Shown here: positions 4,601 through 25,917 of the stretch, in pieces
Layout: each line of letters opens with the position of its first letter
Position numbering within the stretch: the stretch's first letter is position 1
Source of the DNA: Octopus bimaculoides
Lineage: Eukaryota
Assembly (NCBI RefSeq): GCF_001194135.2
Contig: NC_069003.1
Coordinates: forward strand, 33,969,780-34,002,058
Reading direction: 5' to 3'
Length of the DNA: 32,279 nucleotides
Made by a program: the position numbers and the translations under genes
The notes under the pieces: generated by a model
Seen by the model: only the letters and a program-made list of their open reading frames with translations
What the model was told of the DNA's origin: nothing
Databases searched by the model: none

Positions 4601-4699
4601 TCTTTTTAGAAATCCAAAAGGAATTCTATAGAAAGGCACGTCGACTAGAGTTGCTCTCATGTGACCAATTCCCGAGAGAGTTTTTTCTTGACAACTGAT

Positions 4700-9483: not shown

Positions 9484-9614
9484 ATGGAACAAAGAACTGT
9501 CGAAGTTTACCACGAGAAACAGAGAGGAGCACTGTGTGGCCTTCATGCCCTCAATAACTTATTCCAAGACAAAAACGCCTTTACCGAAAAGGCATTGGAC
9601 AGGATAGCTGTAGG
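9484..9614 (+). CDS. Gene A coding exon 1 ([44 protein letters not shown])
   Basis: Josephin catalytic-Cys motif. Donor GG|GTAAAT at 9615. Probable acceptor TTTTCTTTTCACAG| at 9315 for the 5'UTR part. Confidence 0.93.
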
Positions 9615-9726
9615 GTAAATATGCAACACCTGTATGAATGTTGGTGGGTGGTGTGTCTCCTATGAGGTGAGTTCACACCTGTAGGAGCTAAGATCTCTCT
9701 CTCTCTCTATCTTTCCTTCTCTTTCA

Positions 9727-9786
<60 letters not shown>

Positions 9787-10857
9787 CTCCCCCCCCTCTC
9801 TCTCTATCTCTATCTCTCTCACACACACACACTCTTTCTCACCTATACTCAGGTGTGCTTCAAGGTTCAATTTTGATCCTAACACTGCCCTACAAATCAA
9901 CCACCTTTTTGCCGTCACTTGCAACATAGTCCACTCTTAAACAGATCTTGCTATCACCCCTACAAGCAACATAGACACCTGACATCAAACCAGAATTGGC
10001 CCCCATAAACAACGTCCCCGAAAACAATGTCCAGTGAGGTCATACCAGCCTAGTTCCCTTTCACATCACAAACACACAATCGTTAACACACATCAAAAGA
10101 AATCTTGCCCCCACCCCCCAACCTTACCATCACCCCACAAGCAACATAAGCACTTACTCTGCCAGTCATGGTAACGTTACGCTAGAGATTCTTCAGAGGA
10201 ATCCTATTTAGGCCGCTTGTATTCGCATCGCACTCTTTTGGTTATTACCTAAAATTCATGATCAGAGGATAGAGACGAAAACCGAATCGAAGGTAGCGAG
10301 TTTGGTTTTTATTTTATTTTATTTTATTTTATTTTACAAACTATCCCCCTTCTAAAGATCAAATGCTGCAGATGGTTCATCACTGTGCCAGCACCTACAT
10401 TTCTGGCATCCAACTCTAGCATCCGAGAATGTCATTCCTCTGGAAATTCCACTCTTAACTTTCTTTTTTCTATTCCATATTCCTACAACCGTCGTTCAGA
10501 ACTGCCATAACAACCGCAGCATCCGAACCAAACCAATAAAAACAACAGCATTAACAAGCTTCATTAATCCAACTCACTGAACTCCTAAACTATGTTTAAA
10601 ATATTAACGATAATTATCATGTTAATGAACATGCCTTAGATTAATATTGCCTTACTTGTAATTTTTCTGACCCAGGTTGAAACAGAGGGGATTTCTAAGC
10701 AGTTTCCATATCGGAAACTACGAAATCTCTGTCCTACAAGTCGCTGTCAAAACAAAGGGATGTCAACTGATACAGTTTGACAAAAGGAAGTAAGTCATTT
10801 TTCCCAGCGTTCCTTCAAGCTCTGCGTTACGTCATCCCTGTCACTCTTTCCGTTTCA

Positions 10858-10893
<36 letters not shown>

Positions 10894-10995
10894 ATATATA
10901 TATATATGTGTGTTTGCATGCATGTACGTGCGTGCATATGTGTGAATGAGTATGTATGTACGCTCACATGCTGATTATATATATGTGTGCGTGTG

Positions 10996-11027
<32 letters not shown>

Positions 11028-11759
11028 TTCATACATATACATATACATATACTTATATATAGATACACTTATACATAGACATTTATATATGCATGTACGT
11101 GAATGCATATATGCTACAAATGTTTCGATAACATGGCAATTTATTTGCATCGTTGTATTATATCAGCTAAAATTGTCAGTCATTTCCTCGCGCTCTTTGG
11201 AACCATTGAAAGAGAAAAATTGACTGCAAAGAAAAATCGATCACGAGAAAACTTTCGGATAAGTTCACTTTGATAGTGTTAATATTACTGGAGTGGTGGA
11301 TAAGCTCCCATCCAATTAAACATCGTCATTCTAGTAGCATCAGTTCGTTTTTTGAAAAAATAGGAGAGGTCAAATTCTAATTCAAATCAAAATGTGGACA
11401 TTCAACAGCTGAGTCATTTAGTAACATATTTTAGAAGTTCGCGATATAACACGTGACAAAAAGATTCTTTTGTGTGAATCTGAGAGGAGAATATGTTGAA
11501 TAAAATCATAATTAACTGATCCTCATCTATTATATTTTACCCAAAGCCAATAGCTTTTCAGCACCACCTCGTATACTTATTTACGTCCATGTGTACATAG
11601 AAACTTGAATGGTAGCCCTAATGTGCCAACCAGTTTAGCTCAACGGACAAGCCAGTCGGTACCTTTAACGGAACGAGTTCACTCTGTTGCAAAGATTCAG
11701 ACCAAACCGTCAGTCATTCCCCAAAGGGCCTGTTCCATTGTGACCAATATATATCTGTG

Positions 11760-11794
<35 letters not shown>

Positions 11795-11849
11795 NNNNNN
11801 NNNNNNNNNNNNNNNNNNNNNNNNNNNNNNNNNNNNNNNNNNNNNNNNN

Positions 11850-11895
<46 letters not shown>

Positions 11896-12440
11896 AAATT
11901 TCACTTAGGTCAACTTTAGCAGTCTTCCTTTTGGAATTGATAAAATGATAAAATAAAGCGCCGAACTACGCCAGAAGATCGGTGGAACGTGATACCTTAC
12001 CGTTATCTGTTCTGACTCTGCGCATTCCGAGCACATCTCTTGCGATGACATTGATGCCACACTTTATTCACTTCACCTTTCCATTGGACAACAACGTCGT
12101 TGATGAGCGACCAGGAATTGGAAAACTTGTACGCTTGAGCCACTGACGATCTTATATAACACACCCTTGCACAAGCCTGCGCCAACGGAGGCAGATACAA
12201 GATCACACTTGATCGAGAAAGGGAATAAATACCTGGAACAGCACTTGCAATAGCATTTTATATGTTGAGTTCAAATTCCTCCTGGGACAACTTTATCCAG
12301 ATTACGAATTTAAATGCATCCATTGTCATAATTTTGTTTCTGGAAATAAATCTTTCAAAAAGCGATAGTGTCTATTTATTCATAGAATGGCCGGAGAGTG
12401 AATGCTTGTCTTGCAAAGAAATTGGGTTCAAAGGAGTTGG

Positions 12441-12481
<41 letters not shown>

Positions 12482-12537
12482 TTGTTTGCGCGCGTGTATA
12501 TGTGTGTATGAACGTATGTATATAAGTATGTACGAAA

Positions 12538-12612
<75 letters not shown>

Positions 12613-12664
12613 TAGATAGATAGATAGATAGATATACATATATATTTATATATACACACGCACG

Positions 12665-12699
<35 letters not shown>

Positions 12700-12749
12700 T
12701 GTATATATATATATTATATATGCATGTATACATGTATATATGCATGTAC

Positions 12750-12780
<31 letters not shown>

Positions 12781-14013
12781 TGTATGTAGAGAATCATAAC
12801 ACGCATTTTTTATAATCTTACATTATTTTGTCTTTTTTCTACCGGTCCTCCTGACAAAAGAAAATTATCCGAAACGTCGATTTCTCGTACACTTCTTCTC
12901 AGCGTCATTCATTAACTTTGTCACTAATGTTTTTTGCTTATTTTTGCTCTTTTGTTTATTTTTTCTCTTTTACAATTTCCTACATTTATTGGTTGATCCA
13001 TCTCTACTTTGACAAATATAGTGACGACTACTTCGTTGATGAGATCAGAATAAAACTGAAACACGCCGGTAGTTTTCTCTGTTAAGTGTTCAACAAATAC
13101 AAATAACGTTGATTTTGTCCTTGCTGCAAAATTATTCCAGGTTGTTTTTTGTTTTTTCTTTTTTCTCTTAGTTTTTTTTTATGTTTATTTATCATTTTTT
13201 TTTACATCAAACTAACCTAACATTCAATGCCTTGAGAAAAAAATGTCCACCGCTTAATTCACGTGCTATATTCTGCGGTGTCTGCAAACGCTGAGATAAA
13301 TAAATAAATTTATAAATAAAATAAATTTATAAAAAATATTTTAAACTGAAAATCTTGGTGATTAATAATTATTATCGGTTTTAGTAAATTCATTTACAGT
13401 GTCTTAAAGAGATTTTGTGTGTTTTTTGTTTCTTTTTTATCTAATTCAATGTTCCACAACCTTTCTTCGCTCGCGGTACACTTATACTCTTTTCAAAATC
13501 CAGCGGCATAATGAAATAAATACATAACTAACATTATAGGGGAACACTGCGGCACACCTAGCATCTTCTCGTGGCACGTCAAGTGTGCCGCGGCATACCG
13601 GTTGCGGAACACTGATCTAATTCACCAAACAGACGTCTGTCTTTGAATTTTCAATCAAAGACAGCAGCAACTTCGATGGTTTTGAAAGGAAGAAGAAACT
13701 ACATCACGTGAGTTGCTGCATTAGAGAGCAACACATCAACGTGTCGAATTGAACGAGACTTGAGTTCCCTCAGGTCACGGATGTATTTGGAATGTTTGCA
13801 ACAGAGTGGGTTCTGAAAAAAGGTACCCAAAGGCAAGATGGGCGGGCTGTTAAACTGGGAAACCGAAAAAGGGATACAAAAAAAAAAGCATGCACTCTAT
13901 CTGTCTTCGGTTTCTACTAAGTCCATCCGTCTAACTTTACTGAATAGGTTTCAGACAAGCCAGAGAGGTATGTGAAAAGACGTGAAAAGACATATATATA
14001 TAGAGAGAGATAT

Positions 14014-14045
<32 letters not shown>

Positions 14046-14065
14046 GTAGATAGATAGATAGATAT

Positions 14066-14113
<48 letters not shown>

Positions 14114-14209
14114 GTAGATTCGAATAAATGTTCGCAAGTATGCATGCATATATGTATGTATGTATATTTACTATGTATGTGTATATGTATATAAGTGTGT
14201 ATATATATG

Positions 14210-14272
<63 letters not shown>

Positions 14273-14948
14273 ATATGTGTATATGTGTATACATGTATGA
14301 GTATATGTGTATGTGTGTGCGCGCGCGTGTGCGTGTGTGCGTGTGTGTGTGTAATTTTTGGCCCAAATCCCCAAACACTTCTTATTGTAAGATTGAAACC
14401 TCAAGTGTGACTTGTATTCTTTATTTTTTTTATTCTTCTTCTTACTTCCTACCGTGACCGCCACTACCATCAGAGACATTAGAAGCTTGGCTATGAAGGA
14501 GATCAGTGGTTTCGTAATTCACACATGCGGCAGGGGTGGAAGAGGAGGCCACTGGCTTGCCATTACTTTAATTGGCAACGCTTTCTACCGGATCGATTCT
14601 CTTTTACCTCACGTCATTAAAATAGGTAACGAAGAATCACTTTTCAATCACTTGGCTGAAGAAATAAAGAACAAACGCACCATGTTGTTTTGTCTGATGG
14701 ACGAAGGTACGGTGTATAATGACTCTTGGATGAAGGAATTGAAACTTAAAGAGAAACTGACGCATTGCTGTGACAGTCGCCATATTCTAACTCGAAAACA
14801 TTGGATCGAACGCAAATTGGGACATTCTTTGCGCAAATCACAAAAGACTATGCACATACCAGCTACCTCTTCGGGCGTATCACAAAATATCAATGATGAA
14901 TCAGATAATTCTTCAGAAACATCACAAAAAGGTTGCAATCTGCTTTAA
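9484..14948 (+). CDS. Josephin-domain deubiquitinase paralogue A (JOSD1/2-like), join(9484..9614,10676..10789,14474..14948), 239 aa, C-terminal CaaX (CNLL)
   Basis: The spliced ORF is 720 nt. Both introns are GT-AG, phase 2, at the JOSD1/2 positions. Motifs are [17 protein letters not shown] (Q13, C18), GNYEISV, GGHW (H108) and IDS (D123). His-Asp spacing is 15, as in MJD proteases. An in-frame upstream stop lies at 9385. Confidence 0.92.
10676..10789 (+). CDS. Gene A coding exon 2 ([37 protein letters not shown]), absent from the ORF track
   Basis: Acceptor TTTTTCTGACCCAG| and donor AA|GTAAGT. 114 nt, phase 2-2. Matches the Josephin GNYDVNV..AL..KG....WFDKR segment. Confidence 0.9.
13480..13614. 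mobile_element. hAT (Charlie-like) terminal remnant in intron 2 of gene A
   Basis: Ends GTGTGCCGCGGCATACCGGTTGCGGAACACTG, whose reverse complement CAGTGTTCCGCAACC is the typical Charlie TIR type. The opposite end was not located. Confidence 0.5.
14474..14948 (+). CDS. Gene A coding exon 3 ([13 protein letters not shown]...GGHW...IDS...NDSW plus a 72-aa tail ending [12 protein letters not shown])
   Basis: Acceptor CCATCAG| at 14473, the first AG after the pyrimidine tract. Contains the catalytic His and Asp. TAA at 14946-14948. Confidence 0.92.
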
Positions 14949-15199
14949 ATTAGTTTCAACAAGATTCTGAAATCTTTGTTTTACTTTACCTTTCGATTTG
15001 TGTGGAAAAAAAACAACAAAAATCATTAACGCTTGCCTCTCTGTCTGTCTGTCTGTCTTTAACATCTGTTTATATTTACATGTATGCGCGTAAATACATA
15101 TATAAGTGTATGCATGTGTGTGTGTGTGCGTGCGTGTGAGGTGACTCTATGTATGTATGTATGTACGTATATGGAAGCATATATGTGCATATCTATGTA

Positions 15200-15235
<36 letters not shown>

Positions 15236-15236
15236 G

Positions 15237-15790
15237 GTCATCTATAACATCTAGGTCAGATAGATGTTATTCTAGATTCCATGAATGCACCACCACTGTT
15301 CGGCCCAATACAAGGACGATGGCCTGGCCATCTCAAGCCATGTGACCGGTCACACCATAGATAAATTCAGGATCTTATTAACATCGTTAACGAATTTGCT
15401 TTATCTAACGGTCACCGCCAACTTAACAAAGATTAACTTCTTAGATGTAACTCTAGATCTCCAGACAAACAAGTACTACCCCTACAGAAAACCGAACGAG
15501 GGAAATGTTTACGTTCATAAACATTCCAACCGCCCTCCAGCTGTAATCAGAAACTTAGTTTCAGATATCATAGAAAAATCTGCAACCTATCGCCAGAGAG
15601 CTCATTCACAGGTCGGTACCCTAATATAACAAGGCTCAAGCTGGAAGTGGTTTTAGTGATAAGACCACCCCCCAACCTGCATCCTCAAACCCTATGAGAA
15701 TTTAAAAAAGAAAAGTAATCTGGTATAATCCTCCCTGCAACCTAGACGTTATTGTTAATATAGCCAGGAGCTTCCCGACCTTAATTATTA
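15237..15790 (+). mobile_element. Penelope-like retroelement reverse transcriptase fragment
   Basis: QYKDDGLAI...INFLDVTLDLQTNKYYPYRKPN..NVYVHKHSNRPP, and downstream KVIWYNPPCNLDVIVNIARSF. These are YxDD, FLD and WFNPP motifs characteristic of PLE RTs. The fragment is degraded. Confidence 0.85.
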
Positions 15791-16218
15791 TAAACTCTTT
15801 TTAATTCCTGTAATGTTAAGAGAGATTCTTCATTGATTCCTTTCAAAGCTTTCTTTATGCCTGTCTCGGTGTTCATAACATTCGACAATTGGTGACCTGT
15901 AGTGAAAGACTATGAAACCTTTCTACCTTTCCAAACAAAGGGAGACCATAGATACAATCTCAAAAATTTAGCGTTGTTAATATAATTGGTACAAATCAGA
16001 AAAGGTTTTGTGCTGCAAACAGCAGAGAACTGAGATATTTGAGATGAAGGGCGGCAGAACTTTGGAGAAATGAAATGATATCTGTTGGAAGTCTGTGATT
16101 GAAATTTGTGAGAATGGAGAGTTCTGGCATTTAGAGAAAGAGTTAGGAGTTGGAATACAGTAGATAAAACTGACTAGCTCCCTCCCCCGAAATTTCAGGC
16201 CTGTAACTATAATGGAAA

Positions 16219-16460
16219 AGGTTATTATTTTCCTGGGGAAGGTGGCGAGCAGGTAGAATCGCTAGTTTGCAGGACAAAGTGTTTGGTGACATTTTTTTTT
16301 TCGACTACACGTTCTGAGTTCAAATTCCACCAGGATCGATTGTGACTTCCATTTTTCTTTTTGGCGGTCGATAAAATAATACCGGTTGAGCAGTGGGGTC
16401 GATGTAATCGGCAAGCCCCTACATCCAGAATTTCAGTCTTTGTGCCAATAGTATAAAGAA
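16219..16460 (+). mobile_element. tRNA-derived octopus-type SINE
   Basis: AAGGTGGCGAGC.GG.AGAATCG head, GTTCTGAGTTCAAATTCC B-box-like motif, and GTCGATAAAATAA.TACC.GTTGAGCA.TGGGGTCGATGTAATCG body, shared with other copies in the window. Confidence 0.75.
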
Positions 16461-16715
16461 AAAATTATATATTAACATAGTCAATCTACAGAATAGCTCC
16501 CTACACTGCTGATGAAATCAGAATATTATTCAGCCGGACTCCAAGTTTATTAAACTCAACCTCGATTATTGCAAACACAAAACATGAAGTTACTCCATCC
16601 TCAATATAAACTTAGATTTCTACCATTAATTAATGGGGCATTTGATTACGTGATTAACTGAATCATTATAAAGCGTAAGAAGTTGGGATTCACAATACCA
16701 GAAAGAGAACACTTA

Positions 16716-16921
16716 CCGTATTTTCTGGGGAAAAAATCGAAATTTTCAAACCAAAATTTACAGCTAAACAAGGTAGGTTGACTTATACACCAAGACGTAG
16801 GAGGACAAAAACCTTCCATGTGAAATGCTACAGGGTTTGGAAAGATAGTGAGGATGTTTGAATGTTTATGCTACATGTTTACACGATACGCTACATCGAA
16901 AATACAGGCCGGAAAATACGG
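16716..16921. mobile_element. Tc2/pogo-type MITE, 206 bp, TA target duplication
   Basis: TA|CCGTATTTTCTGG...CCGGAAAATACGG|TA terminal inverted repeats, with an internal GACTTATAC subterminal motif. Confidence 0.8.
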
Positions 16922-16929
16922 TAATGAGA

Positions 16930-17085
16930 ATATTCGTCGAGGTCGACTTTGCCTTTCATCCTTTCAGGGTCGATAAATTAAGTACCAGTTGCATACTGAG
17001 GTCGATCTAATCGACTGCCCCCCCCCCACCACCATCACCACTCCTCAAAAATTTCGGGCCTTATGTCAAGAGTAGAGAAGAATAC
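16930..17085 (+). mobile_element. Octopus-type SINE, 5'-truncated
   Basis: GAGGTCGACTTTGCCTTTCATCCTTTCAGGGTCGATAAATTAAGTACCAGTTGCATACTGAGGTCGATCTAATCGAC; near mirror of 31385-31575. Confidence 0.8.
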
Positions 17086-17584
17086 TCTAACAAGGACAAG
17101 GGAGATAACTCAGTGCCAGGGGAGGCCACTCTTTTAAAAACCATAAAAAGTATTTTAAAACGATCTGAACATTTTTATATATTTCTGGATTGACACACAC
17201 ACAGAGGAATGAAATGAAATGTGTGTAAGCGGGAAGTGAAGCCGCTTAAAACCTCCCTTCACCCACAATGTTGAAAAACAGACAATATCAATTATTAACA
17301 ATTATTTATAATGAAAGAATTCCCCAGAAAAATGTCACGTATATTTTTCAGTTAATCACATTTTCTGTCCATTCAGTTTATGGCAAAATGACCATTTGTT
17401 TTGCTTCTCCCTGAGAGTTTTCTGCTGACCAGACGTTAATATAAAGACACAGCAAGCTGAGCTGTTTTCTTCTTCCACTCCACTGACGAACAACAAAGGT
17501 GAAACATTGTGTCCAATACAACGAACTTTGATTAAATATGTTTTTTCAGTTGTCTTGTAATACAGGGGGTGTTGTTCCCCTGTA

Positions 17585-17800
17585 CACGTGTGTGTATCTG
17601 CATGTGTGTGTACGTGTACATCTGTATGTGTATGTACATGTGTGTATGTGTATGTGTACATATGTACGTGTGTGTGTACAAGTGTGTGCGTATGTGTATG
17701 TACGTGTGTATGTGTACGTGTGTGCATGTATGTGTATGTACAAGAGTGTGTATATGTACATGTGTGTGCGCGCACATATATGTGTGTCTGTGTGTGTGGG
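17585..17800. repeat. Compound (TG)/(TA) microsatellite. Similar tracts at 9725-9835, 10860-11110, 12445-12790, 13990-14355, 19884-20015, 26345-26660 and 27900-27970
   Basis: Read directly; these tracts account for the spurious YI/CV/HT-rich ORFs in the track. Confidence 0.95.
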
Positions 17801-18099
17801 GGGGGGTAACAGTAAGCAATTTGATTATTTGCTTTTGAGATCCATTCCACAATGTGGTAACTTGCACAAGTGTCAGCCTCAGGTCAACTGGTACACAGAA
17901 ACTGAATGGAAGCTCATCGTGTGTGTGTGTGTGTGAGAGTGCGTGTGTACGTGCGCGCACACATACCGCTAGTTCACATTCTGGCTGGACTGAAAGGGAG
18001 CACATTTCCCTCCTGAAATATCAACTGGAAATAACAACGATTTTGGCCCCCTTCCAACTGAGTTGCTCCCTTCCGTACAGTTAATTATGAACCATAATA

Positions 18100-18330
18100 A
18101 AAGCATGATAGAACATAACAGAACGTCATAGATTGTCATAGAATGTAATATAATAGCATAGGGTGTAATAGAAAGATATATCACAGAATATCATAGAATG
18201 TAATATAGAATGCCACAAAGAATGGCGTAGAATGTAATGTAACCTCATAGAGTCTTTATGAATGTCATAAAATGTCCAAAAAATGAAATAATAGAATGTC
18301 AACAAAATGTCACCATGGAAATGCCATAGA
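18100..18330. repeat. Degenerate 10-bp minisatellite (CATAGAATGT-like)
   Basis: Repeated CATAGAATGT / AATAGAATGT / CACAGAATAT units. Confidence 0.8.
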
Positions 18331-18434
18331 CAGTAAAAAAAAAAACAATAAATTATTAAACAAACACTACACACATTCCTCACACACACTCTCTCTCTCT
18401 CTCTCTCTCTCTCTCTTTATATATATATGTATGT

Positions 18435-18770
18435 ATATATATATATAAAATTTATTAATGAGGGTAGAAATTGATATTAATCAATTAAAACCAGTGGTCT
18501 AGCCTAGTTCTGGAAATTATATTGCAAACCGACAGACTATGCTGACGAGCCTGCAGATATTTATTTATGTAAATTTTAACAGGTGAAACCATGGTACGTA
18601 GGTTAATCGTTTTTTTATTTAGTATTGTTTCATTTGTCTTGCCCTTTTACAGTCTGTTGTGTCGCTGAATTTTTACTGAGAACATGTTTTTTTCGTGGTT
18701 AGATGATTCGGCATCTATTTCTAGCATATAGGAGTCCACTTTTGCTGGTCATTCCTCTTATTTTTGTATA
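18435..18770 (+). mobile_element. Penelope-type terminal-repeat-like element bounded by (TA)n, carrying a hammerhead motif
   Basis: Complex block between TA tracts containing a hammerhead with a palindromic stem III, the known hallmark of PLE termini. Confidence 0.55.
18537..18601 (+). ncRNA. Type I minimal hammerhead ribozyme (Penelope-type)
   Basis: Stem I is CTATG (18537-41) with CGTAG (18597-601). Core CTGACGA at 18542-48. Stem II is GCCTG (18549-53) with CAGGT (18580-84). GAAA at 18585-88. Stem III is the palindrome ACCATGGT (18588-95). The GUA cleavage triplet ends at 18596. Confidence 0.75.
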
Positions 18771-19026
18771 TATATATATATATATATCTATATAAGGATT
18801 CTTATCGGTATCGGCAGTTGGCCAGCTAAGCCAGTCTCACAGCAGTCCAACAATGGCTCAGCTGACTGTAACTTTGGAGTCACTGCCAAAAAAATTCTTG
18901 TGTAAGAATAATAAATTTGTACTCTACAAAAGGATAGAGTAACCCATCAAATTAATTAATTAATTAATGTAAAATTGTTTTTATTATAACCAAACATAAA
19001 AACAACCATTCATATACATATATATA

Positions 19027-19259
19027 TGCAGGGTTGGCCAAAAGTCACCCAACAGTAAATCAAAATTCCATAAATAATTAATATTCAATTTTATTTATTC
19101 ATTCCAATTATGAATGTTTAATTGAATGCTGGTAATTAATATCACCATTTTCTTCAAAATTTGCTTATTTATTAGAGAAGCCTTATTAAGTTGTTAAACA
19201 TAAATAAATCTTGGAATTTAATGGTTTTGATTTACTGCCAGGTGACTTTTGACCAGCCC

Positions 19260-19263
<4 letters not shown>
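19027..19263. mobile_element. Tc1/mariner MITE inserted in (TA)n
   Basis: ~40-bp imperfect TIRs: TGCAGGGTTGGCCAAAAGTCACCCAACAGTAAATCAAAA versus reverse complement TGCAGGGCTGGTCAAAAGTCACCTGGCAGTAAATCAAAA. Flanked by TA. Confidence 0.85.
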
Positions 19264-19307
<44 letters not shown>

Positions 19308-19883
19308 NNNNNNNNNNNNNNNNNNNNNNNNNNNNNNNNNNNNNNNNNNNNNNNNNNNNNNNNNNNNNNNNNNNNNNNNNNNNNNNNNNNNNNNNNNNNN
19401 NNNNNNNNNNNNNNNNNNNNNNNNNNNNNNNNNNNNNNNNNNNNNNNNNNNNNNNNNNNNNNNNNNNNNNNNNNNNNNNNNNNNNNNNNNNNNNNNNNNN
19501 NNNNNNNNNNNNNNNNNNNNNNNNNNNNNNNNNNNNNNNNNNNNNNNNNNNNNNNNNNNNNNNNNNNNNNNNNNNNNNNNNNNNNNNNNNNNNNNNNNNN
19601 NNNNNNNNNNNNNNNNNNNNNNNNNNNNNNNNNNNNNNNNNNNNNNNNNNNNNNNNNNNNNNNNNNNNNNNNNNNNNNNNNNNNNNNNNNNNNNNNNNNN
19701 NNNNNNNNNNNNNNNNNNNNNNNNNNNNNNNNNNNNNNNNNNNNNNNNNNNNNNNNNNNNNNNNNNNNNNNNNNNNNNNNNNNNNNNNNNNNNNNNNNNN
19801 NNNNNNNNNNNNNNNNNNNNNNNNNNNNNNNNNNNNNNNNNNNNNNNNNNNNNNNNNNNNNNNNNNNNNNNNNNNNNNNNNNN

Positions 19884-19931
<48 letters not shown>

Positions 19932-20029
19932 GACACATATACATATCGACACACACATACATATATACACACATACATACACATATATGTACACACATAC
20001 GTACACACACACACAAAAATATATAAATA

Positions 20030-20210
20030 TAGGCGCAGGCATGGTTGTGTGGTTATGTTATGAAGATTGCTTCGTAGCCCCATGGTTTTGGTTTCAATGC
20101 CATTGGATGGCACTTTGGGTGTCTTAGATGGCAGTCTTGAACTGACCAATACCTTGTAATTTAAACGTAGCAGAAGAAAACTGCATGGAAGCCCATTGTT
20201 TGTGTGTGTG
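20030..20210 (+). mobile_element. Diverged tRNA-derived SINE
   Basis: AGGCGCAGGCATGGTTGTGTGGTTA..AAGATTGCTTC....CATGGTTTTGGTTTCAATGCCATTG..TGGCACTTTGGGT head of the same family as 21765 and 24405. Confidence 0.55.
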
Positions 20211-20513
20211 CATTGCCGACATCATTTCCAAGCTGTAAACGCTTCCATAAGATTCTTGCCACCAGAAATACGGTGAACTTGTAATTGGCACATTAAATAC
20301 CAGTAATTAATGCTGTTAACATTCTCAAACTGTGATATAAAATAATTGAATTTTTAAAAATGTTTTTTTAGAAATACATGCAGGTACATAAACACAATAG
20401 ATACACACACACACTACAGACAAACATATAAGCATGTGAACATACAGATATATATATATACGCGTACGTAAATACATGTTTTTATGCATGCATAAACAAA
20501 TATATATACACAT

Positions 20514-20547
<34 letters not shown>

Positions 20548-20850
20548 CACATCATCGACCAGACTATTAGATGTTGTTATACATTGCTGGTCACAGTGTG
20601 CTTCCAAATGATGCCACCCCACTGATGACATATTCTGTCATCGGAGACAAATTGGGAAAAATAGGGAAAATGAAAATGGTATATATTAATGAAATGACGA
20701 CATATATATATATATATATATATATAATTAATTCAATAATGGGATAAAAATCTTTGATAAGAATTTTATCAGGAAGCTAGTGTGTAAAAAAATTCATAAG
20801 GGAAAAAAATCATCATTTTTTTTATTCCCAAGAATATAATTATTCATTTA

Positions 20851-20981
20851 TATTTATATAAGGGCATTCCTACGGAATAATGCCACACACTAGACTTCCA
20901 AAATAAAATGTAAAAATGTGTTTGCTTATTTTGAAAGTCTAGTGTGTGGCATTATTCTGTAGTAATGCCCTTATATAAATA
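20851..20981. repeat. Fold-back inverted repeat (~56-bp arms, 3 mismatches, ~19-nt spacer); probable MITE
   Basis: Left arm TATTTATATAAGGGCATTCCTACGGAATAATGCCACACACTAGACTTCCAAAATAA pairs with 20926-20981. Confidence 0.85.
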
Positions 20982-21764
20982 TATANNNNNNNNNNNNNNN
21001 NNNNNNNNNNNNNNNNNNNNNNNNNNNNNNNNNNNNNNNNNNNNNNNNNNNNNNNNNNNNNNNNNNNNNNNNNNNNNNNNNNNNNATATATATATAGAAT
21101 TAAGATTCAGTTGAGTTAGGTACTTAAATTGAGGCACCTTGTTAGGTCTGAGCAACATGGATACTCAACAATATCAAGTGACTATCAGACTAGATGCACA
21201 AGTACTGGCCATCAGATTTTCTTGCAGTGTATACAGGTAATGGGACCCAGCTGAGTGAAGGTATCCACTCTTTGTTACTCATGGATATATATAATATATA
21301 TATATATATATATAATAATGATAATAATAATAATCACTGATTAAGTAAAAAAATGATGGATTTGGTATTAATCTTTATTTTATTCAACGATCGTTTCAAC
21401 CGATCTTCTTACTGTCCCTTATGGGTGGGATTCTATGCATCATGTTGTGTTGCATCCATTTTGCAGTGTGGGCCACATCAGATACATTCATACACAAAGT
21501 GGTGTCTCACTAAAGAGCTTAAGTTTGGGCGGCCATGTTGTTCCTTGACCACTTGAGTTAGGGAATGGTCTTGTTATCTGACCACAGGATGGGTTGAAAT
21601 GACCATTGTACCAAATAAAAACTAATACCAAATCTGTCTTCCGTTTACTTAATCCATAATTATTATCTCAATTAACACTGTGGAATTCCTTAAGTCGTTA
21701 GTGACAATTGAATTTTTCCTTTTCAGTTTTATATTGTCTATAGCTGCCTTTGTTATTTTATATA

Positions 21765-21890
21765 TGGTTCTGGGTTCAGTCCCACTGCAAGGCACCATGG
21801 GTAAGTGTCTTCTCCTATAGCCTTGGGCCAATCAAAGCCTTGTGAGTGGATTTGGTAGACGGAAATTGAAAGAAGCCTGTTGTATATATG
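21765..21890 (+). mobile_element. tRNA-derived CORE-like SINE fragment
   Basis: GGTTCTGGGTTCAGTCCCACTGCAAGGCACCATGGGTAAGTGTCTT...AAAGCCTTGTGAGTGGATTTGGTAGACGGAAATTGAAAGAAGCC followed by a (TA) tail. Confidence 0.75.
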
Positions 21891-22204
21891 TGTATGTACA
21901 TATATATATATATATATATATCGTTGTTACTTATTTATATATATATGTATGTATGTAGATATGCAGGGCAGGGAATCGTCAATTAGTAATAAAATTAATA
22001 ATTAACAATTTTGCCGGGTAGCTCAGTATGAAAAAACCTTTTCGGTAAAATCATTTATAATCATAAATATATAGGGATTGACAGTAACCTGCTTCTCCAA
22101 CATACTGACAATTCAGAAATAGCAGCCAAAGAACTACTGATTCCAAAACTACAAATTATTACTCTAAATTGATAGCGATTGTATGTATGTATCTATCTAC
22201 ATGA

Positions 22205-22510
22205 AGGCACATGGCCTACAGGTCAGGGTGTTGCACTCACAATTGCTAGATAGTGGGTTCAATTGCGGGACCAAGCTATGCATTGTGTTCTTGAGCAAAA
22301 CACTTCATTTCATGTTGCTCCAGTCTGCTTAGCTCTCAATGGTTAACCCTGTGATGGACTGGCTTTCTGGCCAGGAGAAACGTTGGCCTGATCACCTAGC
22401 CAATGGGGTGGCTTCATTCAGGAGCCAAAAATAATGCAAAGCACATTGTGACTAGTGATGTATAACTTGCAATAGTCTGGTCAATCACATGACCACGCAA
22501 TATATGCACA
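22205..22510 (+). mobile_element. tRNA-derived SINE of a further family, downstream of the gene B stop
   Basis: GGCACATGGCCT...GGTCAGGGTGTTGCACTCAC...GGGTTCAATT (A/B-box-like), then GCATTGTGTTCTTGAGCAAAACACTTCATTTCATGTTGCTCCAGTC. Confidence 0.65.
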
Positions 22511-22671
22511 CATGCACGCACACACACACACATAAATGCACATGCACACATATAATTATACAAACATACACATGCAGTCAATAATTCTTCACACAAACAA
22601 AAACAAAATGAAAAAAAAAAGAGATAAAAAAAAAAGTCAAACAAAGGTTTGAGAGATTGGTTGGAACTAGT

Positions 22672-23083
22672 TTAAATCAGATTGCAACCATTTTGTGTTG
22701 TGTCTGAAGAATCCTCAGCTTCACAAGCAGCTTCAGATTTTTTTTTTTTAGGATCCAAAGGTTTGGTCAGTGGATTCCCCCATTCCTCTTCTGGCGGTAA
22801 CTGTCTAAACCAACTTTTATTTTTATCAACATCAGGTGTGACTATAAGAAATAATTCCGTATGATTGTTGTTCAATTGTTCACAGAGATGGACGAGAAGC
22901 TCGTCATCGCTACCAATCTCAACCGGCGCCTTATTATTGGAGTCCAAACTGTAGTAGACGTTACTGATTTTCCTGATGGTAATCCAGTGCTTGCCTTGAG
23001 AAATGAGTTTCATGATTATGTTGCCACACGGAATGTTCAGTATAAAACCTTCGATATTCTCCAAAACTAAACATTTCAAATTC
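22672..23083 (-). CDS. Gene B coding exon 3 ([18 protein letters not shown]...GKHW...LDS...KSW plus a 45-aa tail ending [12 protein letters not shown])
   Basis: Acceptor CCACCAAG| is the first AG after a long pyrimidine tract. Contains the catalytic His and Asp. Confidence 0.92.
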
Positions 23084-24063
23084 CTTGGTGGCCAGTGCCA
23101 TGGGGAAGAATGTGATGAAAAATAAGAAAAAGAAGAAGAAAAAAAAGAAAAAAGAGAAACATGAGATAAGTTAGGATTGAGTCAGCGTTGATACATCAGA
23201 AAGACATGTAGAGACAATTAGGCCCAAAATTACACACACTTCAGCAAAAACACACACAAACAGACTCCCTCCCCCCACGAACAGTTTGACAGGATCTGGC
23301 CAGCCAGGGAGCTATCCGTTTACTACATATGTATAGATAAATGATAGAAAATAGAATGAATGACATCTTTTATCTAAAAATCACTACAATTGTTTTAACA
23401 CATTTTTACACCTGTAATACACCTGTGAGATGTTGTGTAATCTTGCATCCAAAATGTAAAATTCACTTCCTCAGGTGATTACTTAAATAAGTCTTTTGTT
23501 AGATCCTACAATCATTAATAGGAGCATTTCCACTGTATGATGACATCAGGTAGCCAATAACATTGGACAAGCTTTGCATAGCATTCTACAAGGATTTTAC
23601 CCAAATCTTAATATCTAATTATATATATATGAGACATAGAAAGAGTAAATACTAGAAAAATACATACCTTGTTTTGTTAAACCAGAGCATATCATAACCT
23701 TTTGATTGCACTGCTACCATGAGGACATTTATATCATAGTTCCCCACCGCAAATGTACTGCGGTAGGGATTAAAGATTTCTTTGGGGCATAATCTGGGAA
23801 CAAAGAAATAATTAGTGTTAATTAATGTATTATTATTGTTATCATCAGCATCATCATAATTATCATTCTCATCATTTCCATAACATGATTTCGAAACTCA
23901 GTTTGCTGAATTCAAGAATATGTTATATGAAGTTTAAACATGTGCTGATGAGGCCTACTCAGGTAGACGCATGTCCTCAGCTGTCTTATATATATATATA
24001 TAAATTTCAGGATCAAATAAAAAGACAACAAATGGAAAATATGACATACCTGTGTATGTGTGT

Positions 24064-24111
<48 letters not shown>

Positions 24112-24364
24112 AAAACGTATAGTAAATAAACATACCAACATATGCTAGATACACAGATGAACAAAAAACACAGAAGGCCACCGACCCCTCTTCAGTTATT
24201 GGCCAGAGAGTCGAGTGCAATTTCGGCCATTATCAATAATATTGCTTCCACTCTGGAGNNNNNNNNNNNNNNNNNNNNNNNNNNNNNNNNNNNNNNNNNN
24301 NNNNNNNNNNNNNNNNNNNNNNNNNNNNNNNNNNNNNNNNNNNNNNNNNNNNNNNNNNNNNNNN

Positions 24365-24405
<41 letters not shown>

Positions 24406-25917
24406 GATGGGCTTATTTCAGTTTTTGTCTATCAAATCCAGTCACAAGGCTTTGGCCAGCCCAAGGCTATAGATGAAGACATTTGCCCAAGGTGTCATGC
24501 AGTGTGACTGAACCTGGAACCATGTGGTTCAGAAGCAAGCTTCTTACCACACAACTACACCAGCAATTATAACAGCCTATGTATCCATATCACACACACA
24601 CACACACACACAATCAACTCCCCACCTTAAAGCTAGTCAACCAAGCCTACTCGACATACCTGTCGCCACTTTTCTTCCCCACCCCACCCACCGACATTGT
24701 GCATGTGTGTTTCTTCTACGTAGACCCTGTCTAATCACTATACCCAATCATTTCTCCCCAGGACATCATTCCACTGACGTTTCCACAATGCTGATGATTT
24801 CTCTACTACCATCAATGTAATTTCAGAGTGACTGTGAAGGCCATGGGAACCACCAGACCAGACCAGACCATTAAAGAAATCATATCAATGGCACTAAATG
24901 AGATGTCGCAGCTGGCATTTTCTTTAAAACCAAACACTGGACCGAACACAGAATACATATTCAAAGAGTTTCATTTGTTCCAATAAGCACAAAGGCAAAA
25001 ACAAATTCTTCATATTAAGGTGAATCGTCAAACAGTATCCAGTGAAACCAAATTCCATTCTTCTAGCAAATGGTTTGGTGCATCCAGACTGGAAGGGAAA
25101 TAATTAGAAGCAGGAATCGAAATAGAAAACTCAAAGAATAGGTCACTCAAGATCTCGTTTCCCACAGGTGTGAATTCACCTCTTAAAAGATACCTCTAAT
25201 ATACATTCATACCAGTTTTGTATATCTAAGCACCTACAGGTGCAAACTCACCTCACAAAAGGTACCTCTCACACACACACACACTCACTTATATAGAGGA
25301 TGTATAGTTTAGCTCCGACAGGTGTGAACTCACTTCCTAGAAGATACACATTTCATATAAATTCGTACAGGTGTTGCATATCTTAGCTCCTACAGGTGCA
25401 AACTCCCCTTGCAGAAGATACACCTCCCACATGCATTCATATATGTGTAGCATGTTTCAGCTCCTGCAGACATGCAACACGTATTGGAAAAGACATCCAC
25501 ACCTACAAATATGTATAAGGGTTGTATATTTACCTACAGGTATGCAGACATCATCATCATCATCAATGTTCCATGCTGGCATGGGTTGGACAAGTGGGTT
25601 GACAGGATCTGCCAAGGCCAAAGACTGCATTGCGCTCCAGTATCTGTTTTGGTATAGTTTCTACAGCTGGAGGCCCTTTCTAACACACGTAATATAAAAC
25701 ACATACATACACACATACACACTCACACATACATACATACACAGGTGTTGTATATTTACCTTGTACAGATATTATCCAAATCCTTTTTAGTGAAGGCATT
25801 ACCATCTTGGAACAAGTTGTTGAGTGCATGAAGGCCGCACAGTTGCAGCCTTTGCGTCTCATGGTAAATTTTAGGTGGGGTGTTATTCACTGTGTTTCCA
25901 GAAAACTGAAACTCCAT
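22672..25917 (-). CDS. Josephin-domain deubiquitinase paralogue B (JOSD1/2-like), complement(join(22672..23083,23668..23793,25760..25917)), 231 aa, C-terminal CaaX (CNLI)
   Basis: The spliced ORF is 696 nt with two phase-2 GT-AG introns. Motifs are [20 protein letters not shown] (Q22, C27), [20 protein letters not shown] (H127) and LDS (D142). An in-frame TAA lies a few codons upstream of the ATG. Confidence 0.94.
23668..23793 (-). CDS. Gene B coding exon 2 ([41 protein letters not shown]), absent from the ORF track
   Basis: Acceptor TTTCTTTGTTCCCAG| and donor AG|GTATGT. 126 nt, phase 2-2. Confidence 0.94.
24405..24570 (-). mobile_element. CORE-like SINE in intron 1 of gene B
   Basis: Reverse complement of the 21765 family (…AAGCTTGCTTCTGAACCACATGGTTCCAGGTTCAGTCACACTGCATGACACCTTGGGCAAATGTCTT…). 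Confidence 0.75.
25160..25540 (-). repeat. ~75-80-bp tandem repeat, about 5 units, in intron 1 of gene B; one homologous unit starts intron 1 of gene A (9615-9693)
   Basis: Unit close to AGATATGCAACACCTGTA.GAAT…GTGTATCTTCT…GAGGTGAGTTCACACCTGTAGGAGCTA, aligned by hand. Confidence 0.85.
25548..25687 (-). mobile_element. SINE/LINE 3' tail with (GAT)n end
   Basis: Minus strand reads GTTAGAAAGGGCCTCCAGCTGTAGAAACTATACC…CAACCCATGCCAGCATGGAACATTGATGATGATG. Confidence 0.65.
25760..25917 (-). CDS. Gene B coding exon 1 ([53 protein letters not shown]); this frame is absent from the ORF track
   Basis: Catalytic-Cys motif. Donor AG|GTAAAT at 25759. Probable 5'UTR acceptor TTCCTTATCTTTACAG| near 26181. 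Confidence 0.94.

What the first reader, a model, noticed from the sequence alone, without database searches (positions are those of the whole stretch)
9484..25917. Tail-to-tail pair of catalytically intact Josephin deubiquitinases, both with a C-terminal CaaX prenylation box
Seen: two complete JOSD-like genes, each with Gln, Cys, His and Asp in register. After the normal Josephin end (NDSW167 in A, KSW186 in B) they continue for 72 and 45 aa. These linkers do not align, yet both converge on SS[ED]T[ST]Q[KN]GCNL[LI]*. Known: vertebrate JOSD1/2 are essentially bare Josephin domains, and JOSD1 membrane targeting depends on its own ubiquitination. Cys-a-a-Leu is the GGTase-I signature, and lipid-anchored DUBs are known in other families (USP32, MINDY1, farnesylated UCH-L1). 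I know of no prenylated Josephin. Inference: a lineage-specific subfamily of constitutively membrane-anchored MJD DUBs, kept as a duplicated pair, possibly regulating membrane-protein ubiquitination and endocytosis.
Basis: partly seen in the sequence, partly recalled or inferred. Interest (0 to 1): 0.88.

Follow-up and report, generated by a model that had tools for sequence, protein, structure and literature searches.

The report
Octopus Josephin deubiquitinase pair with CaaX tails
Two neighbouring octopus genes encode ubiquitin-removing enzymes of the Josephin family that, unlike 326 relatives sampled from other organisms, end in a signal for attaching a lipid anchor; this is a plausible but untested lineage-specific way of tethering the enzyme to membranes.

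Summary
The window is Octopus bimaculoides DNA with two convergent three-exon Josephin (JOSD-type) genes. My spliced models, A of 239 aa and B of 231 aa, match RefSeq XP_014776700.1 and XP_014776703.1 exactly. All assembly gaps lie in introns or between the genes. Gln, Cys, His and Asp are in register in both. Both Josephin cores are modelled confidently, and both C-terminal extensions look disordered and end in CNLL or CNLI.

These ends fit the GGTase-I rule (branched aliphatic a2; X = L or I). They are kept in the O. vulgaris and O. sinensis orthologues. None of 326 other Josephins carries a comparable motif, including 18 bivalve and gastropod sequences.

- The tails are not convergent. They are a retained homologous 91-nt island, 81% identical, that runs 39 nt past the stop codon into the 3'UTR. 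Part of the constraint is therefore on the nucleotides, or the island reflects old gene conversion.
- The acidic tail has no adjacent polybasic or palmitoylation signal. That argues for endomembranes rather than a constitutive plasma-membrane or endocytic role.

B is strongly constrained (dN/dS 0.06). A evolves fast and has predicted isoforms that lack the catalytic Cys or the tail.

Prenylation is untested. This is a new variant of a known kind, of moderate interest.

The parts
9484..9614 (+). Gene A exon 1 (Met1 to first two bases of Gly44); holds Gln13 (9520-9522) and catalytic Cys18 (9535-9537)
   Evidence: tblastn to JOSD1/2; donor GTAAAT; exact match to XP_014776700.1
10676..10789 (+). 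Gene A exon 2 (GNYEISV helix region), phase 2 at both ends
   Evidence: conserved in O. vulgaris at L003:1219-1332
14474..14948 (+). Gene A exon 3: rest of the Josephin domain (His108 at 14550-14552, Asp123 at 14595-14597), the 72-aa extension, CaaX CNLL (14934-14945) and stop TAA (14946-14948)
   Evidence: AF2 extension pLDDT 40-60
25760..25917 (-). Gene B exon 1; Gln22 (25852-25854) and catalytic Cys27 (25837-25839)
   Evidence: exact match to XP_014776703.1
23668..23793 (-). Gene B exon 2
22672..23083 (-). Gene B exon 3: His127 (22987-22989), Asp142 (22942-22944), the 45-aa extension, CaaX CNLI (22675-22686) and stop TAA (22672-22674)
   Evidence: AF2 residues 195-231 mostly pLDDT below 50
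14897..14987 (+). Paralogue-shared nucleotide island, A copy: last 52 nt of CDS plus first 39 nt of 3'UTR
   Evidence: the repeat finder I12, 91 nt at 81%; blastn; 44/52 and 30/39 identical against random flanks
22633..22723 (-). Paralogue-shared nucleotide island, B copy
   Evidence: 0 differences from O. vulgaris and O. sinensis over the island
9638..9666 (+). Alternative first coding exon of gene A (RefSeq isoform X2, [10 protein letters not shown]...); its product lacks catalytic Cys18 but keeps the CaaX tail
   Evidence: P0062 sequence reproduced from the window, donor GTGAGT
24827..24986 (+). Alternative terminal coding exon of gene A (RefSeq isoform X3, 134 aa, no His/Asp and no CaaX). 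It lies inside intron 1 of gene B, so the A transcription unit runs antisense across B exons 2-3
   Evidence: P0064 reproduced exactly, acceptor TTTCAG

Best explanation
This is the JOSD locus of Octopus bimaculoides. An inverted (tail-to-tail) duplication produced two three-exon genes.

Each gene encodes three parts:
- a Josephin-fold cysteine protease domain with a complete Gln/Cys/His/Asp active site;
- a disordered C-terminal linker;
- a terminal CaaX box, CNLL in A and CNLI in B.

Inferred mechanism: cytosolic geranylgeranyltransferase-I attaches a C20 isoprenoid to Cys236 (A) or Cys228 (B). RCE1-type cleavage of the last three residues and ICMT-type carboxymethylation follow. The lipidated flexible tail then tethers the catalytic domain to membranes. 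Because the tail is acidic and has no second signal, those are most probably ER or Golgi endomembranes. There the enzyme would remove ubiquitin from membrane-associated substrates. By analogy with human MJD enzymes, these could include ester-linked (Ser/Thr) ubiquitin.

The tail was already present in the gene before the duplication, and both copies have kept it. B is the conserved 'working' orthologue of the single invertebrate JOSD. A is a fast-evolving paralogue with alternative isoforms.

Shown: gene structure, active-site residues, predicted fold, motif, its conservation in three Octopus species, and its absence elsewhere. Inferred: prenylation, membrane localisation and catalytic activity.
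For: Gene models and identity:
- The spliced models equal the RefSeq proteins exactly.
- Pfam Josephin scores lie well above the cut-off.
- Catalytic residues sit in invariant alignment columns and align to JOSD2, PDB 6PGV.

Structure:
- The AF2 core of A has pLDDT above 90, and its best PDB match is JOSD2 6pgv_A (TMt 0.87, E = 1e-12).
- The B core is likewise confident.
- Both extensions have low pLDDT, as expected for an accessible CaaX linker.

Fit of the motif to prenylation rules:
- GGTase-I targets are Caa[L/F/I/M/V], governed mainly by a branched aliphatic a2 and by X; a1 is flexible (PMC11304957).
- Human GBP-2 ends in CNIL. It is labelled by mevalonate in vivo, and GFP-CNIL goes to the Golgi in a manner that prenylation inhibitors abolish (PMC2998424).

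Conservation:
- The A orthologue in O. vulgaris ends [12 protein letters not shown].
- The B orthologues in O. vulgaris and O. sinensis end [12 protein letters not shown].
- The B extension has dN/dS 0.17 at dS 0.11.
- All five nucleotide differences between the A and B tails give conservative replacements: N/D, E/D, S/T, K/N and L/I.
- Synonymous sites between A and B are saturated (29/71), so the duplication is old, yet both copies kept the motif and the stop position.

Specificity:
- Only the 6 Octopus entries among 332 Josephins carry the motif.
- Nine of the 326 others have a Cys at -4, but none combines an aliphatic a2 with a GGTase-type X.

Precedent for prenylated DUBs:
- Yeast Miy1 (MINDY family) (PMC11847538).
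- USP32, which has a CaaX box (PMC10485055).
Against: - There is no experimental or transcript-level evidence for the lipid.
- Conservation of the tail extends 39 nt past the stop codon (30/39 identical), and the coding part shows no synonymous change (8/8 codons, Fisher p = 0.0015). Some or all of the constraint could therefore be on RNA or DNA rather than on the peptide, or the block could be an old gene-conversion tract.
- X = Ile (gene B) is a weaker GGTase-I determinant than Leu.
- Asn at a1 is non-canonical.
- The A extension has dN/dS of about 0.84, from small counts.
- The O. vulgaris annotation records only the last exon of A, and I could not see A exon 1 in another species. Long-term function of A as a protease is therefore less secure.
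- No prenylation predictor was available.
Confidence: 0.6

Rival explanations
1. The terminal block is conserved mainly for an RNA- or DNA-level reason. Candidates are a 3'-end regulatory element spanning the stop codon, or a double-stranded RNA or A-to-I editing substrate formed when read-through transcripts of A run antisense through B. On this view the encoded CaaX is a passenger that is not prenylated, or not importantly so.
For: - The 91-nt island is 81% identical and crosses the stop codon into the 3'UTR (30/39), while both flanks are at random identity.
- Synonymous change in the tail is zero (8/8 codons) against 29/71 in the domain.
- The island shows 0 (B) and 3 (A) differences between O. 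bimaculoides and O. vulgaris, where neighbouring non-coding DNA is 84-92% identical.
- RefSeq isoform X3 shows that A transcription can traverse B in antisense. The two island copies would then be complementary within one pre-mRNA.
- Strong nucleotide-level constraint around recoding sites is a known feature of coleoid genomes (my own knowledge, not tested here).
Against: - RNAalifold finds only a weak local hairpin (-5.2 kcal/mol) with one compensatory pair.
- There is no Rfam match.
- There is no complementary partner for the island within either gene.
- All five tail differences are conservative at the protein level, and the frame, the Cys and the stop position are kept in both copies.
- The B extension as a whole is under protein-level constraint, dN/dS 0.17.
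- RNA-level constraint and a functional CaaX are not mutually exclusive.
Confidence: 0.2
2. The shared tail is the footprint of a short gene-conversion tract between the inverted paralogues. The CaaX matters at most in gene B, and gene A is a degenerating or neofunctionalising copy whose tail is carried along.
For: - The island has sharp boundaries of typical conversion-tract length, and it includes non-coding sequence.
- A evolves much faster than B: dN/dS is 0.35 to 0.84 against 0.06, and A is 80% identical to its O. vulgaris orthologue where B is 97% identical.
- A has isoforms lacking the catalytic Cys (X2) or His/Asp and the tail (X3).
- O. vulgaris annotates only a 147-aa fragment of A.
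Against: - A-specific (S, K, L) and B-specific (T, N, I) tail residues are shared by O. bimaculoides and O. vulgaris, so there has been no conversion since those species split.
- The island has since stayed nearly unchanged in both genes (0 and 3 changes in 91 nt), which argues for selection rather than neutral drift after conversion.
- The A Josephin part still shows purifying selection (0.35), an open frame, an intact active site and a confident fold.
Confidence: 0.12
3. The C-terminus acts as some other short linear motif, for example a hydrophobic C-terminal docking or degron motif, rather than as a prenylation site.
For: Only the sequence itself supports this: a conserved hydrophobic -L-[LI]-COOH end preceded by a Ser/Thr/acidic cluster. 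Bivalve JOSDs also keep a lineage-specific conserved C-terminus (LQSxDDL) that has no Cys. The extreme C-terminus of invertebrate JOSDs can therefore be functional in other ways.
Against: - The invariant Cys exactly at -4, with aliphatic a2 and L/I at X, is the defining CaaX pattern.
- Asn at -2 does not fit the classical PDZ class I, II or III ligands, and the end does not fit PTS1 or KDEL/KKXX signals (my own knowledge of those consensus motifs).
Confidence: 0.05

Closest known systems
Human JOSD2 and JOSD1 (MJD-class deubiquitinases / ubiquitin esterases; PDB 6PGV)
   Same: The Josephin domain is the same, with Gln/Cys/His/Asp in register. B matches 6PGV at E = 7.5e-43 and A at E = 7.2e-16. 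The A model superposes on 6pgv_A with TMt 0.87. JOSD1 is also a membrane-associated Josephin (Seki et al. 2013, as summarised in PMC8224227). MJD enzymes are selective ubiquitin esterases (PMC7848729).
   Different: The vertebrate proteins end a few residues after the domain and have no CaaX. JOSD1 reaches the membrane through its own ubiquitination, not through a lipid. The octopus proteins add 45-72 disordered residues plus CNL[LI]. They are also divergent: B is 42% identical to JOSD1 and 39% to JOSD2, and A is 35% and 28%.
Other invertebrate JOSD proteins (bivalve, gastropod, insect and arachnid 'josephin-1/2-like')
   Same: They are orthologous single-domain Josephins, and many have a low-complexity C-terminal extension of 30-100 aa.
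   Different: None of the 326 sampled ends in a GGTase-type CaaX. Bivalves have their own conserved end, LQSxDDL. Mytilus JOSD is 55-65% identical to insect JOSDs, whereas octopus B is only about 45% identical to other protostome JOSDs. The octopus lineage is therefore fast-evolving.
Prenylated deubiquitinases of other families: yeast Miy1 / human MINDY1-2, USP32, and (disputed) farnesylated UCH-L1
   Same: The design principle is the same: a cysteine DUB with a C-terminal CaaX box that gives prenylation-dependent membrane localisation. This has been shown for Miy1 (PMC11847538). USP32 carries a CaaX box (PMC10485055). UCH-L1 is listed as prenylated (PMC8224227).
   Different: The catalytic folds are unrelated (MINDY, USP, UCH). 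Miy1 depends on farnesyltransferase, whereas the octopus X residues (L, I) predict geranylgeranylation. No member of the MJD/Josephin class has been reported with a CaaX in the searched library.
Human GBP-2 C-terminus (CNIL)
   Same: The CaaX is almost identical: Cys-Asn-aliphatic-Leu. It is proven to be prenylated, and fused to GFP alone it directs the protein to the Golgi in a manner that prenylation inhibitors abolish (PMC2998424).
   Different: The protein is unrelated (a dynamin-like GTPase). The resemblance covers only the four-residue signal.

Membership tests
MJD / Josephin cysteine deubiquitinases (Pfam PF02099) | Josephin domain match above the curated threshold | tested here: met
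   A scores 74.6 bits and B 91.2 bits against a cut-off of 26. HMM coverage is 1-150 of 157 for A and 1-156 of 157 for B.
MJD / Josephin cysteine deubiquitinases (Pfam PF02099) | Catalytic Cys, His and Asp/Asn plus the oxyanion Gln, all in register | tested here: met
   A Q13/C18/H108/D123 and B Q22/C27/H127/D142 fall in invariant columns of 32 Josephins and align to JOSD2 6PGV.
MJD / Josephin cysteine deubiquitinases (Pfam PF02099) | Josephin (papain-like) fold | tested here: met
   The AF2 model of A has 134 residues at pLDDT 90 or above. Foldseek's top hit is 6pgv_A (E = 1.1e-12, TMt 0.87), followed by ATXN3L and ATXN3 Josephin domains. The B model is confident over about residues 11-190 but was not fold-searched.
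MJD / Josephin cysteine deubiquitinases (Pfam PF02099) | Ubiquitin isopeptidase or esterase activity | not testable with these tools
   This needs recombinant protein with Ub-AMC, Ub-PA and Ub-Lys/Ub-Thr substrates.
CaaX-prenylated proteins (GGTase-I substrates) | Cys exactly four residues from the translated C-terminus | tested here: met
   TGC AAT CTG CTT TAA at 14934-14948 and TGC AAT CTG ATT TAA at 22686-22672. The same ends appear in the RefSeq models.
CaaX-prenylated proteins (GGTase-I substrates) | Branched aliphatic a2, and X = L (or F/I/M/V) | tested here: met
   a2 is Leu in both, and X is Leu (A) or Ile (B). The rule is taken from PMC11304957. CNIL of GBP-2 is a proven substrate (PMC2998424). 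The exact tetrapeptides CNLL and CNLI were not found in that study's held supplements.
CaaX-prenylated proteins (GGTase-I substrates) | Flexible, solvent-exposed linker before the Cys | tested here: met
   pLDDT is 40-60 over A 171-239 and mostly below 50 over B 195-231, with no secondary structure in the last 30 residues. The composition is polar and acidic. This is a prediction only.
CaaX-prenylated proteins (GGTase-I substrates) | Evolutionary conservation of the motif among orthologues | tested here: met
   The motif is kept in the O. vulgaris and O. sinensis B orthologues and in the O. vulgaris A orthologue. Only one genus could be sampled.
CaaX-prenylated proteins (GGTase-I substrates) | Covalent isoprenoid on the Cys, with -aaX cleavage and methylation | not testable with these tools
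   This needs metabolic labelling or mass spectrometry.
Plasma-membrane-targeted prenyl proteins (two-signal rule) | A second signal next to the CaaX: a polybasic stretch or palmitoylatable Cys within about 10 residues | tested here: not met
   Net charge of the 20 residues before the Cys is -3 (A) and -2 (B). The nearest other Cys is B C215 (13 residues upstream) or A C181. The KKKK of B lies 19-22 residues upstream of Cys228.

The most novel reading that the evidence does not exclude
Octopus, and possibly coleoids generally, has turned its only JOSD-type ubiquitin esterase/deubiquitinase into an obligatorily geranylgeranylated membrane enzyme. That would be the first lipid-anchored member of the MJD class.

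In addition, the 91-nt island that spans the CaaX codons, the stop codon and the proximal 3'UTR would be an RNA-level control element. It might be, for example, a duplex or A-to-I editing substrate created by convergent read-through transcription of the two paralogues. Such an element would tune whether the lipid-anchored form is made.
Probability: 0.1. Interest if true: 0.7.

Novelty: new variant of a known kind. Interest (0 to 1): 0.42.

Why it matters
If the tails are prenylated, this would be the first Josephin/MJD enzyme with a constitutive lipid anchor. It would add a fourth DUB fold to the short list of prenylated deubiquitinases (MINDY/Miy1, USP32, and the disputed UCH-L1).

It would also be a natural experiment on what happens when a JOSD is tied permanently to membranes. 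Human JOSD1 reaches the membrane only after it is itself ubiquitinated. MJD enzymes were recently shown to be selective ubiquitin esterases, so a membrane-tethered version could point to ester-linked ubiquitination of membrane or ER substrates.

The practical reach is limited:
- The evidence is purely sequence-based.
- The motif has been seen in only one genus.
- The proteins are already in public databases.
- Prenylation of DUBs as a principle is known.

The nucleotide-level island across the stop codon is an extra curiosity. It cautions against reading conservation of the tail as peptide selection alone.

Tried and rejected
1. Exons hidden in assembly gaps: rejected. All gaps are intronic or intergenic, HMM coverage is complete, and the gap-free O. 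vulgaris and O. sinensis loci show the same exons wherever the fetched DNA covers them.

2. CaaX-bearing Josephins being widespread: rejected for the sampled data. Two word-index searches, one exhaustive HMMER search of 1.84 billion representatives and one Mytilus-seeded search gave 332 Josephins. Only the Octopus entries carry the motif.

3. Looking for squid, cuttlefish or Nautilus orthologues: failed. None appeared in any search, so how far back the tail goes is unknown.

4. Independent (convergent) origin of the two tails: rejected by the shared island.

5. Recent gene conversion: rejected. The paralogue-specific tail residues are shared across species.

6. A structured RNA in the island: only a weak hairpin, no Rfam family, and no intragenic complementary partner.

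7. Island derived from a repeat present elsewhere in the window: rejected. The 12-mer GGTTGCAATCTG recurs at window 130, but the flanks do not match, so this is a chance hit.

8. Scores for CNLL and CNLI in the yeast GGTase-I CXXX screen supplements: not found in the held files.

9. Other genes in the window: the five non-repetitive ORFs I scanned, including 15285-15626 and 41-466, gave no Pfam hit.

10. Trichinella 'SNARE domain protein' P0089 (469 aa), a Josephin followed by a hydrophobic C-terminal segment: noted as a possible alternative membrane anchor, but it looks like a fused gene model and I did not pursue it.

11. A exon 1 in O. vulgaris: it lies about 300-400 nt outside the fetched locus L003, so I could not check it.

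Full report
**What is in the window**

The sequence is AT-rich (36.6% GC), full of microsatellites, and has nine runs of N. Reading the junctions gives these models:

| Gene | Strand | Exon 1 | Exon 2 | Exon 3 | Protein |
|---|---|---|---|---|---|
| A | + | 9484-9614 | 10676-10789 | 14474-14948 | 239 aa |
| B | - | 25917-25760 | 23793-23668 | 23083-22672 | 231 aa |

All introns are GT..AG. In both genes the two introns are phase 2 and sit at homologous positions.

The two translations are exact matches to Octopus bimaculoides RefSeq predictions. A equals XP_014776700.1, 'josephin-1 isoform X1'. B equals XP_014776703.1, 'josephin-1'.

**The gap question**

- The N runs at 11795-11849 and 24259-24364 lie in A intron 2 and B intron 1.
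- The N runs at 19308-19883 and 20986-21085 lie between the genes.
- No exon touches a gap.
- The Pfam Josephin model is covered almost end to end: 1-150 of 157 positions in A and 1-156 of 157 in B.
- The gap-free O. vulgaris and O. sinensis assemblies contain all three B exons in the same order. The O. vulgaris assembly also contains A exons 2 and 3.
- Nothing coding is hidden in the gaps.

**The enzymes**

- Pfam PF02099 scores 74.6 bits for A and 91.2 bits for B, against a threshold of 26.
- In a 32-sequence alignment, Gln13, Cys18, His108 and Asp123 of A fall in invariant columns, and so do Gln22, Cys27, His127 and Asp142 of B.
- The same residues align to the active site of human JOSD2, PDB 6PGV, at E = 7.5e-43 for B and 7.2e-16 for A.
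- AlphaFold2 models the A core at pLDDT above 90, and Foldseek's best match is 6pgv_A (TMt 0.87).
- The B core is equally confident.
- 'Catalytically intact' is as well supported as sequence can make it. Activity itself is untested.
- Human MJD enzymes are highly selective ubiquitin esterases (PMC7848729). The substrate bond may therefore be an ester rather than an isopeptide.

**The tails**

After W167 (A) and W186 (B) the proteins continue for 72 and 45 residues. Both extensions are predicted to be disordered, with pLDDT of 40-60. They end [12 protein letters not shown] and [12 protein letters not shown].

Both ends fit the GGTase-I consensus Caa[L/F/I/M/V]. In that consensus a branched aliphatic a2 and the X residue dominate, and a1 is tolerant (PMC11304957). 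The near-identical CNIL of human GBP-2 is prenylated in cells. CNIL fused alone to GFP takes the protein to the Golgi, and prenylation inhibitors abolish that localisation (PMC2998424).

The motif is kept in the O. vulgaris and O. sinensis orthologues of B (...[12 protein letters not shown]) and in the O. vulgaris orthologue of A (...[12 protein letters not shown]). The tail-to-tail arrangement is also kept in O. vulgaris, where the stops are about 17 kb apart instead of 7.7 kb.

**How unusual is it**

I collected 332 Josephin proteins from four searches:
- two word-index searches seeded with A and B;
- one exhaustive HMMER pass over 1.84 billion cluster representatives;
- one search seeded with Mytilus JOSD.

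Only the six Octopus entries carry GCNL[LI]. Nine of the 326 others have a Cys at -4, about what chance gives, and none combines it with an aliphatic a2 and a GGTase-type X. Eighteen bivalve and gastropod JOSDs have C-terminal extensions but no CaaX. The bivalves share a different conserved end, LQSxDDL.

Full-text searches found no paper linking Josephins to a CaaX box or to prenylation. Prenylated DUBs are known in other folds: Miy1/MINDY (PMC11847538), USP32 (PMC10485055) and UCH-L1 as listed in PMC8224227.

No squid, cuttlefish or Nautilus sequence surfaced in any search. The claim 'lineage-specific' is therefore established only for the genus Octopus.

A and B are only 41% identical as proteins. 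At residues they share within the Josephin domain, only 29 of 71 use the same codon, so synonymous sites are saturated. In the tail, all 8 shared residues use identical codons (Fisher p = 0.0015).

An inverted-repeat scan and blastn both pick out one 91-nt block, 14897-14987 against 22633-22723, at 81% identity. Identity is as follows:

| Segment | Identical bases |
|---|---|
| 52 nt upstream flank | 15/52 |
| Last 52 coding nt | 44/52 |
| First 39 nt of 3'UTR | 30/39 |
| 39 nt downstream flank | 8/39 |

This block is the best-conserved stretch between the paralogues. It is better conserved than the catalytic-Cys exon, which is 73% identical.

Between O. bimaculoides and O. vulgaris the island has 0 changes in B and 3 in A. 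Neighbouring non-coding DNA is 84-92% identical.

The A-specific and B-specific tail residues are shared across species, which rules out recent gene conversion.

The tail was therefore present before the duplication and has been retained. Part of the constraint, though, cannot be on the peptide. Three possibilities remain open:
- an adjoining 3'UTR regulatory element;
- an RNA duplex or editing substrate;
- an old conversion tract that has since been under selection.

I found only a weak hairpin, no Rfam match, and no complementary partner inside either gene.

Several points favour peptide-level selection as well:
- All five nucleotide differences in the last 13 codons give conservative replacements.
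- The frame, the Cys and the stop position are maintained in both copies.
- The B extension as a whole has dN/dS 0.17.

**The pair is asymmetric**

dN/dS between O. bimaculoides and O. vulgaris:

| Region | dN/dS |
|---|---|
| B, whole gene | 0.06 |
| B, extension | 0.17 |
| A, Josephin part of exon 3 | 0.35 |
| A, extension (few sites) | 0.84 |

A has small deletions next to the GNYD helix and before the catalytic His.

RefSeq predicts two further A isoforms, and both can be reproduced from the window:
- X2 starts at 9638 in intron 1 and lacks the catalytic Cys but keeps the tail.
- X3 splices exon 2 to a + strand exon at 24827-24986 inside B intron 1. It lacks His, Asp and the tail.

X3 implies that the A transcription unit can run antisense across B exons 2-3.

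In a neighbour-joining tree A and B pair together on long branches. That is consistent with a lineage-specific inverted duplication followed by acceleration in A. Long-branch attraction cannot be excluded.

Octopus B is itself divergent, at about 45% identity to other protostome JOSDs. Mytilus JOSD is 55-65% identical to insect JOSDs. No third JOSD-type protein from Octopus appeared in any search.

**Most likely mechanism**

I commit to the following, at confidence about 0.6:
1. Both proteins are substrates of GGTase-I.
2. The geranylgeranylated, processed C-terminus on a flexible linker tethers an active Josephin domain to membranes.

The 20 residues before the Cys are acidic (-3 in A, -2 in B). 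There is no neighbouring palmitoylatable Cys or adjacent polybasic stretch. The KKKK of B lies 19-22 residues upstream of Cys228, and the basic, possibly helical segment of A lies 35-60 residues upstream of Cys236.

Under the usual two-signal rule (general knowledge), that pattern predicts ER or Golgi endomembranes, or chaperoned cytosolic cycling.

What has been shown is the anatomy, the conservation and the taxonomic restriction. Lipidation, localisation and activity are all inferred.

**Verdict**

- The finding is a new variant of a known kind: a Josephin DUB with a CaaX anchor, in proteins already deposited but not described.
- Interest is moderate (0.42). It is a clean, testable hypothesis with a plausible precedent. 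It is restricted in known distribution and unsupported by experiment. It is also complicated by nucleotide-level conservation that offers a competing reason for the shared tail.

Noticed in passing
window 14897-14987 (+) and 22633-22723 (-): A 91-nt island is 81% identical between the two paralogues. It spans the last 52 coding nt, the stop codon and 39 nt of 3'UTR. Its flanks are at random identity, and the coding part has no synonymous differences. It has 0 (B) and 3 (A) changes against O. vulgaris. This suggests an RNA- or DNA-level constraint, or an old conversion tract.
   Followed up: partly
window 24827-24986 (+), inside intron 1 of gene B: This is the terminal coding exon of RefSeq isoform X3 of gene A (134 aa, no His/Asp, no CaaX). 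It implies that transcription of A can read through the 7.7-kb spacer and run antisense across exons 2-3 of B. In such a pre-mRNA the two island copies would be complementary.
   Followed up: partly
window 9638-9666 (+): This is the alternative first coding exon of gene A (isoform X2, [10 protein letters not shown]). Its product lacks the catalytic Cys but keeps the CaaX tail. It could be a non-catalytic, possibly membrane-tethered variant.
   Followed up: partly
window 25150-25469 (- strand sense; TRF array 25307-25469) and 9600-9700 (+): A minisatellite of about 74 nt (around four copies) in B intron 1 is 72-81% identical to the sequence straddling the exon 1 donor and the start of intron 1 in gene A. 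That A sequence includes the X2 alternative exon. Most units carry a GTGAGT/GTGAAT-like donor motif.
   Followed up: partly
proteins P0065, P0229, P0230, P0231, P0234, P0237 (bivalve JOSDs): Bivalve Josephins share their own conserved extreme C-terminus, (P)xLQSxDDL, at the end of an otherwise variable extension. This is a different lineage-specific terminal motif of unknown function.
   Followed up: no
L001 14983-23210 and L002 12043-20085, against window 23084-23667: Intron 2 of gene B is about 8 kb in O. vulgaris and O. sinensis but only 584 nt in O. bimaculoides. The A-B spacer is about 17 kb against 7.7 kb. These are large size differences between congeners, presumably from repeat insertions.
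   Followed up: no
window 4684-4866, 8816-8977, 21764-21912, 24365-24565: A dispersed repeat of about 150-190 nt (SINE-like) has many copies, 78-91% identical, in the O. vulgaris loci too. One copy directly abuts the assembly gap ending at 24364, and others lie within 200 nt of gaps.
   Followed up: no
window 15285-15626 (+): This is a 114-aa ORF in the spacer (…[34 protein letters not shown]…). From memory it resembles a retrotransposon-derived fragment, but it gave no Pfam hit.
   Followed up: partly
protein P0089 (Trichinella nativa, 469 aa, 'SNARE domain protein'): A Josephin domain is followed by a C-terminal hydrophobic tail-anchor-like segment. It is probably a fused gene model. If it is real, it would be another route to a membrane-tethered Josephin.
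   Followed up: no
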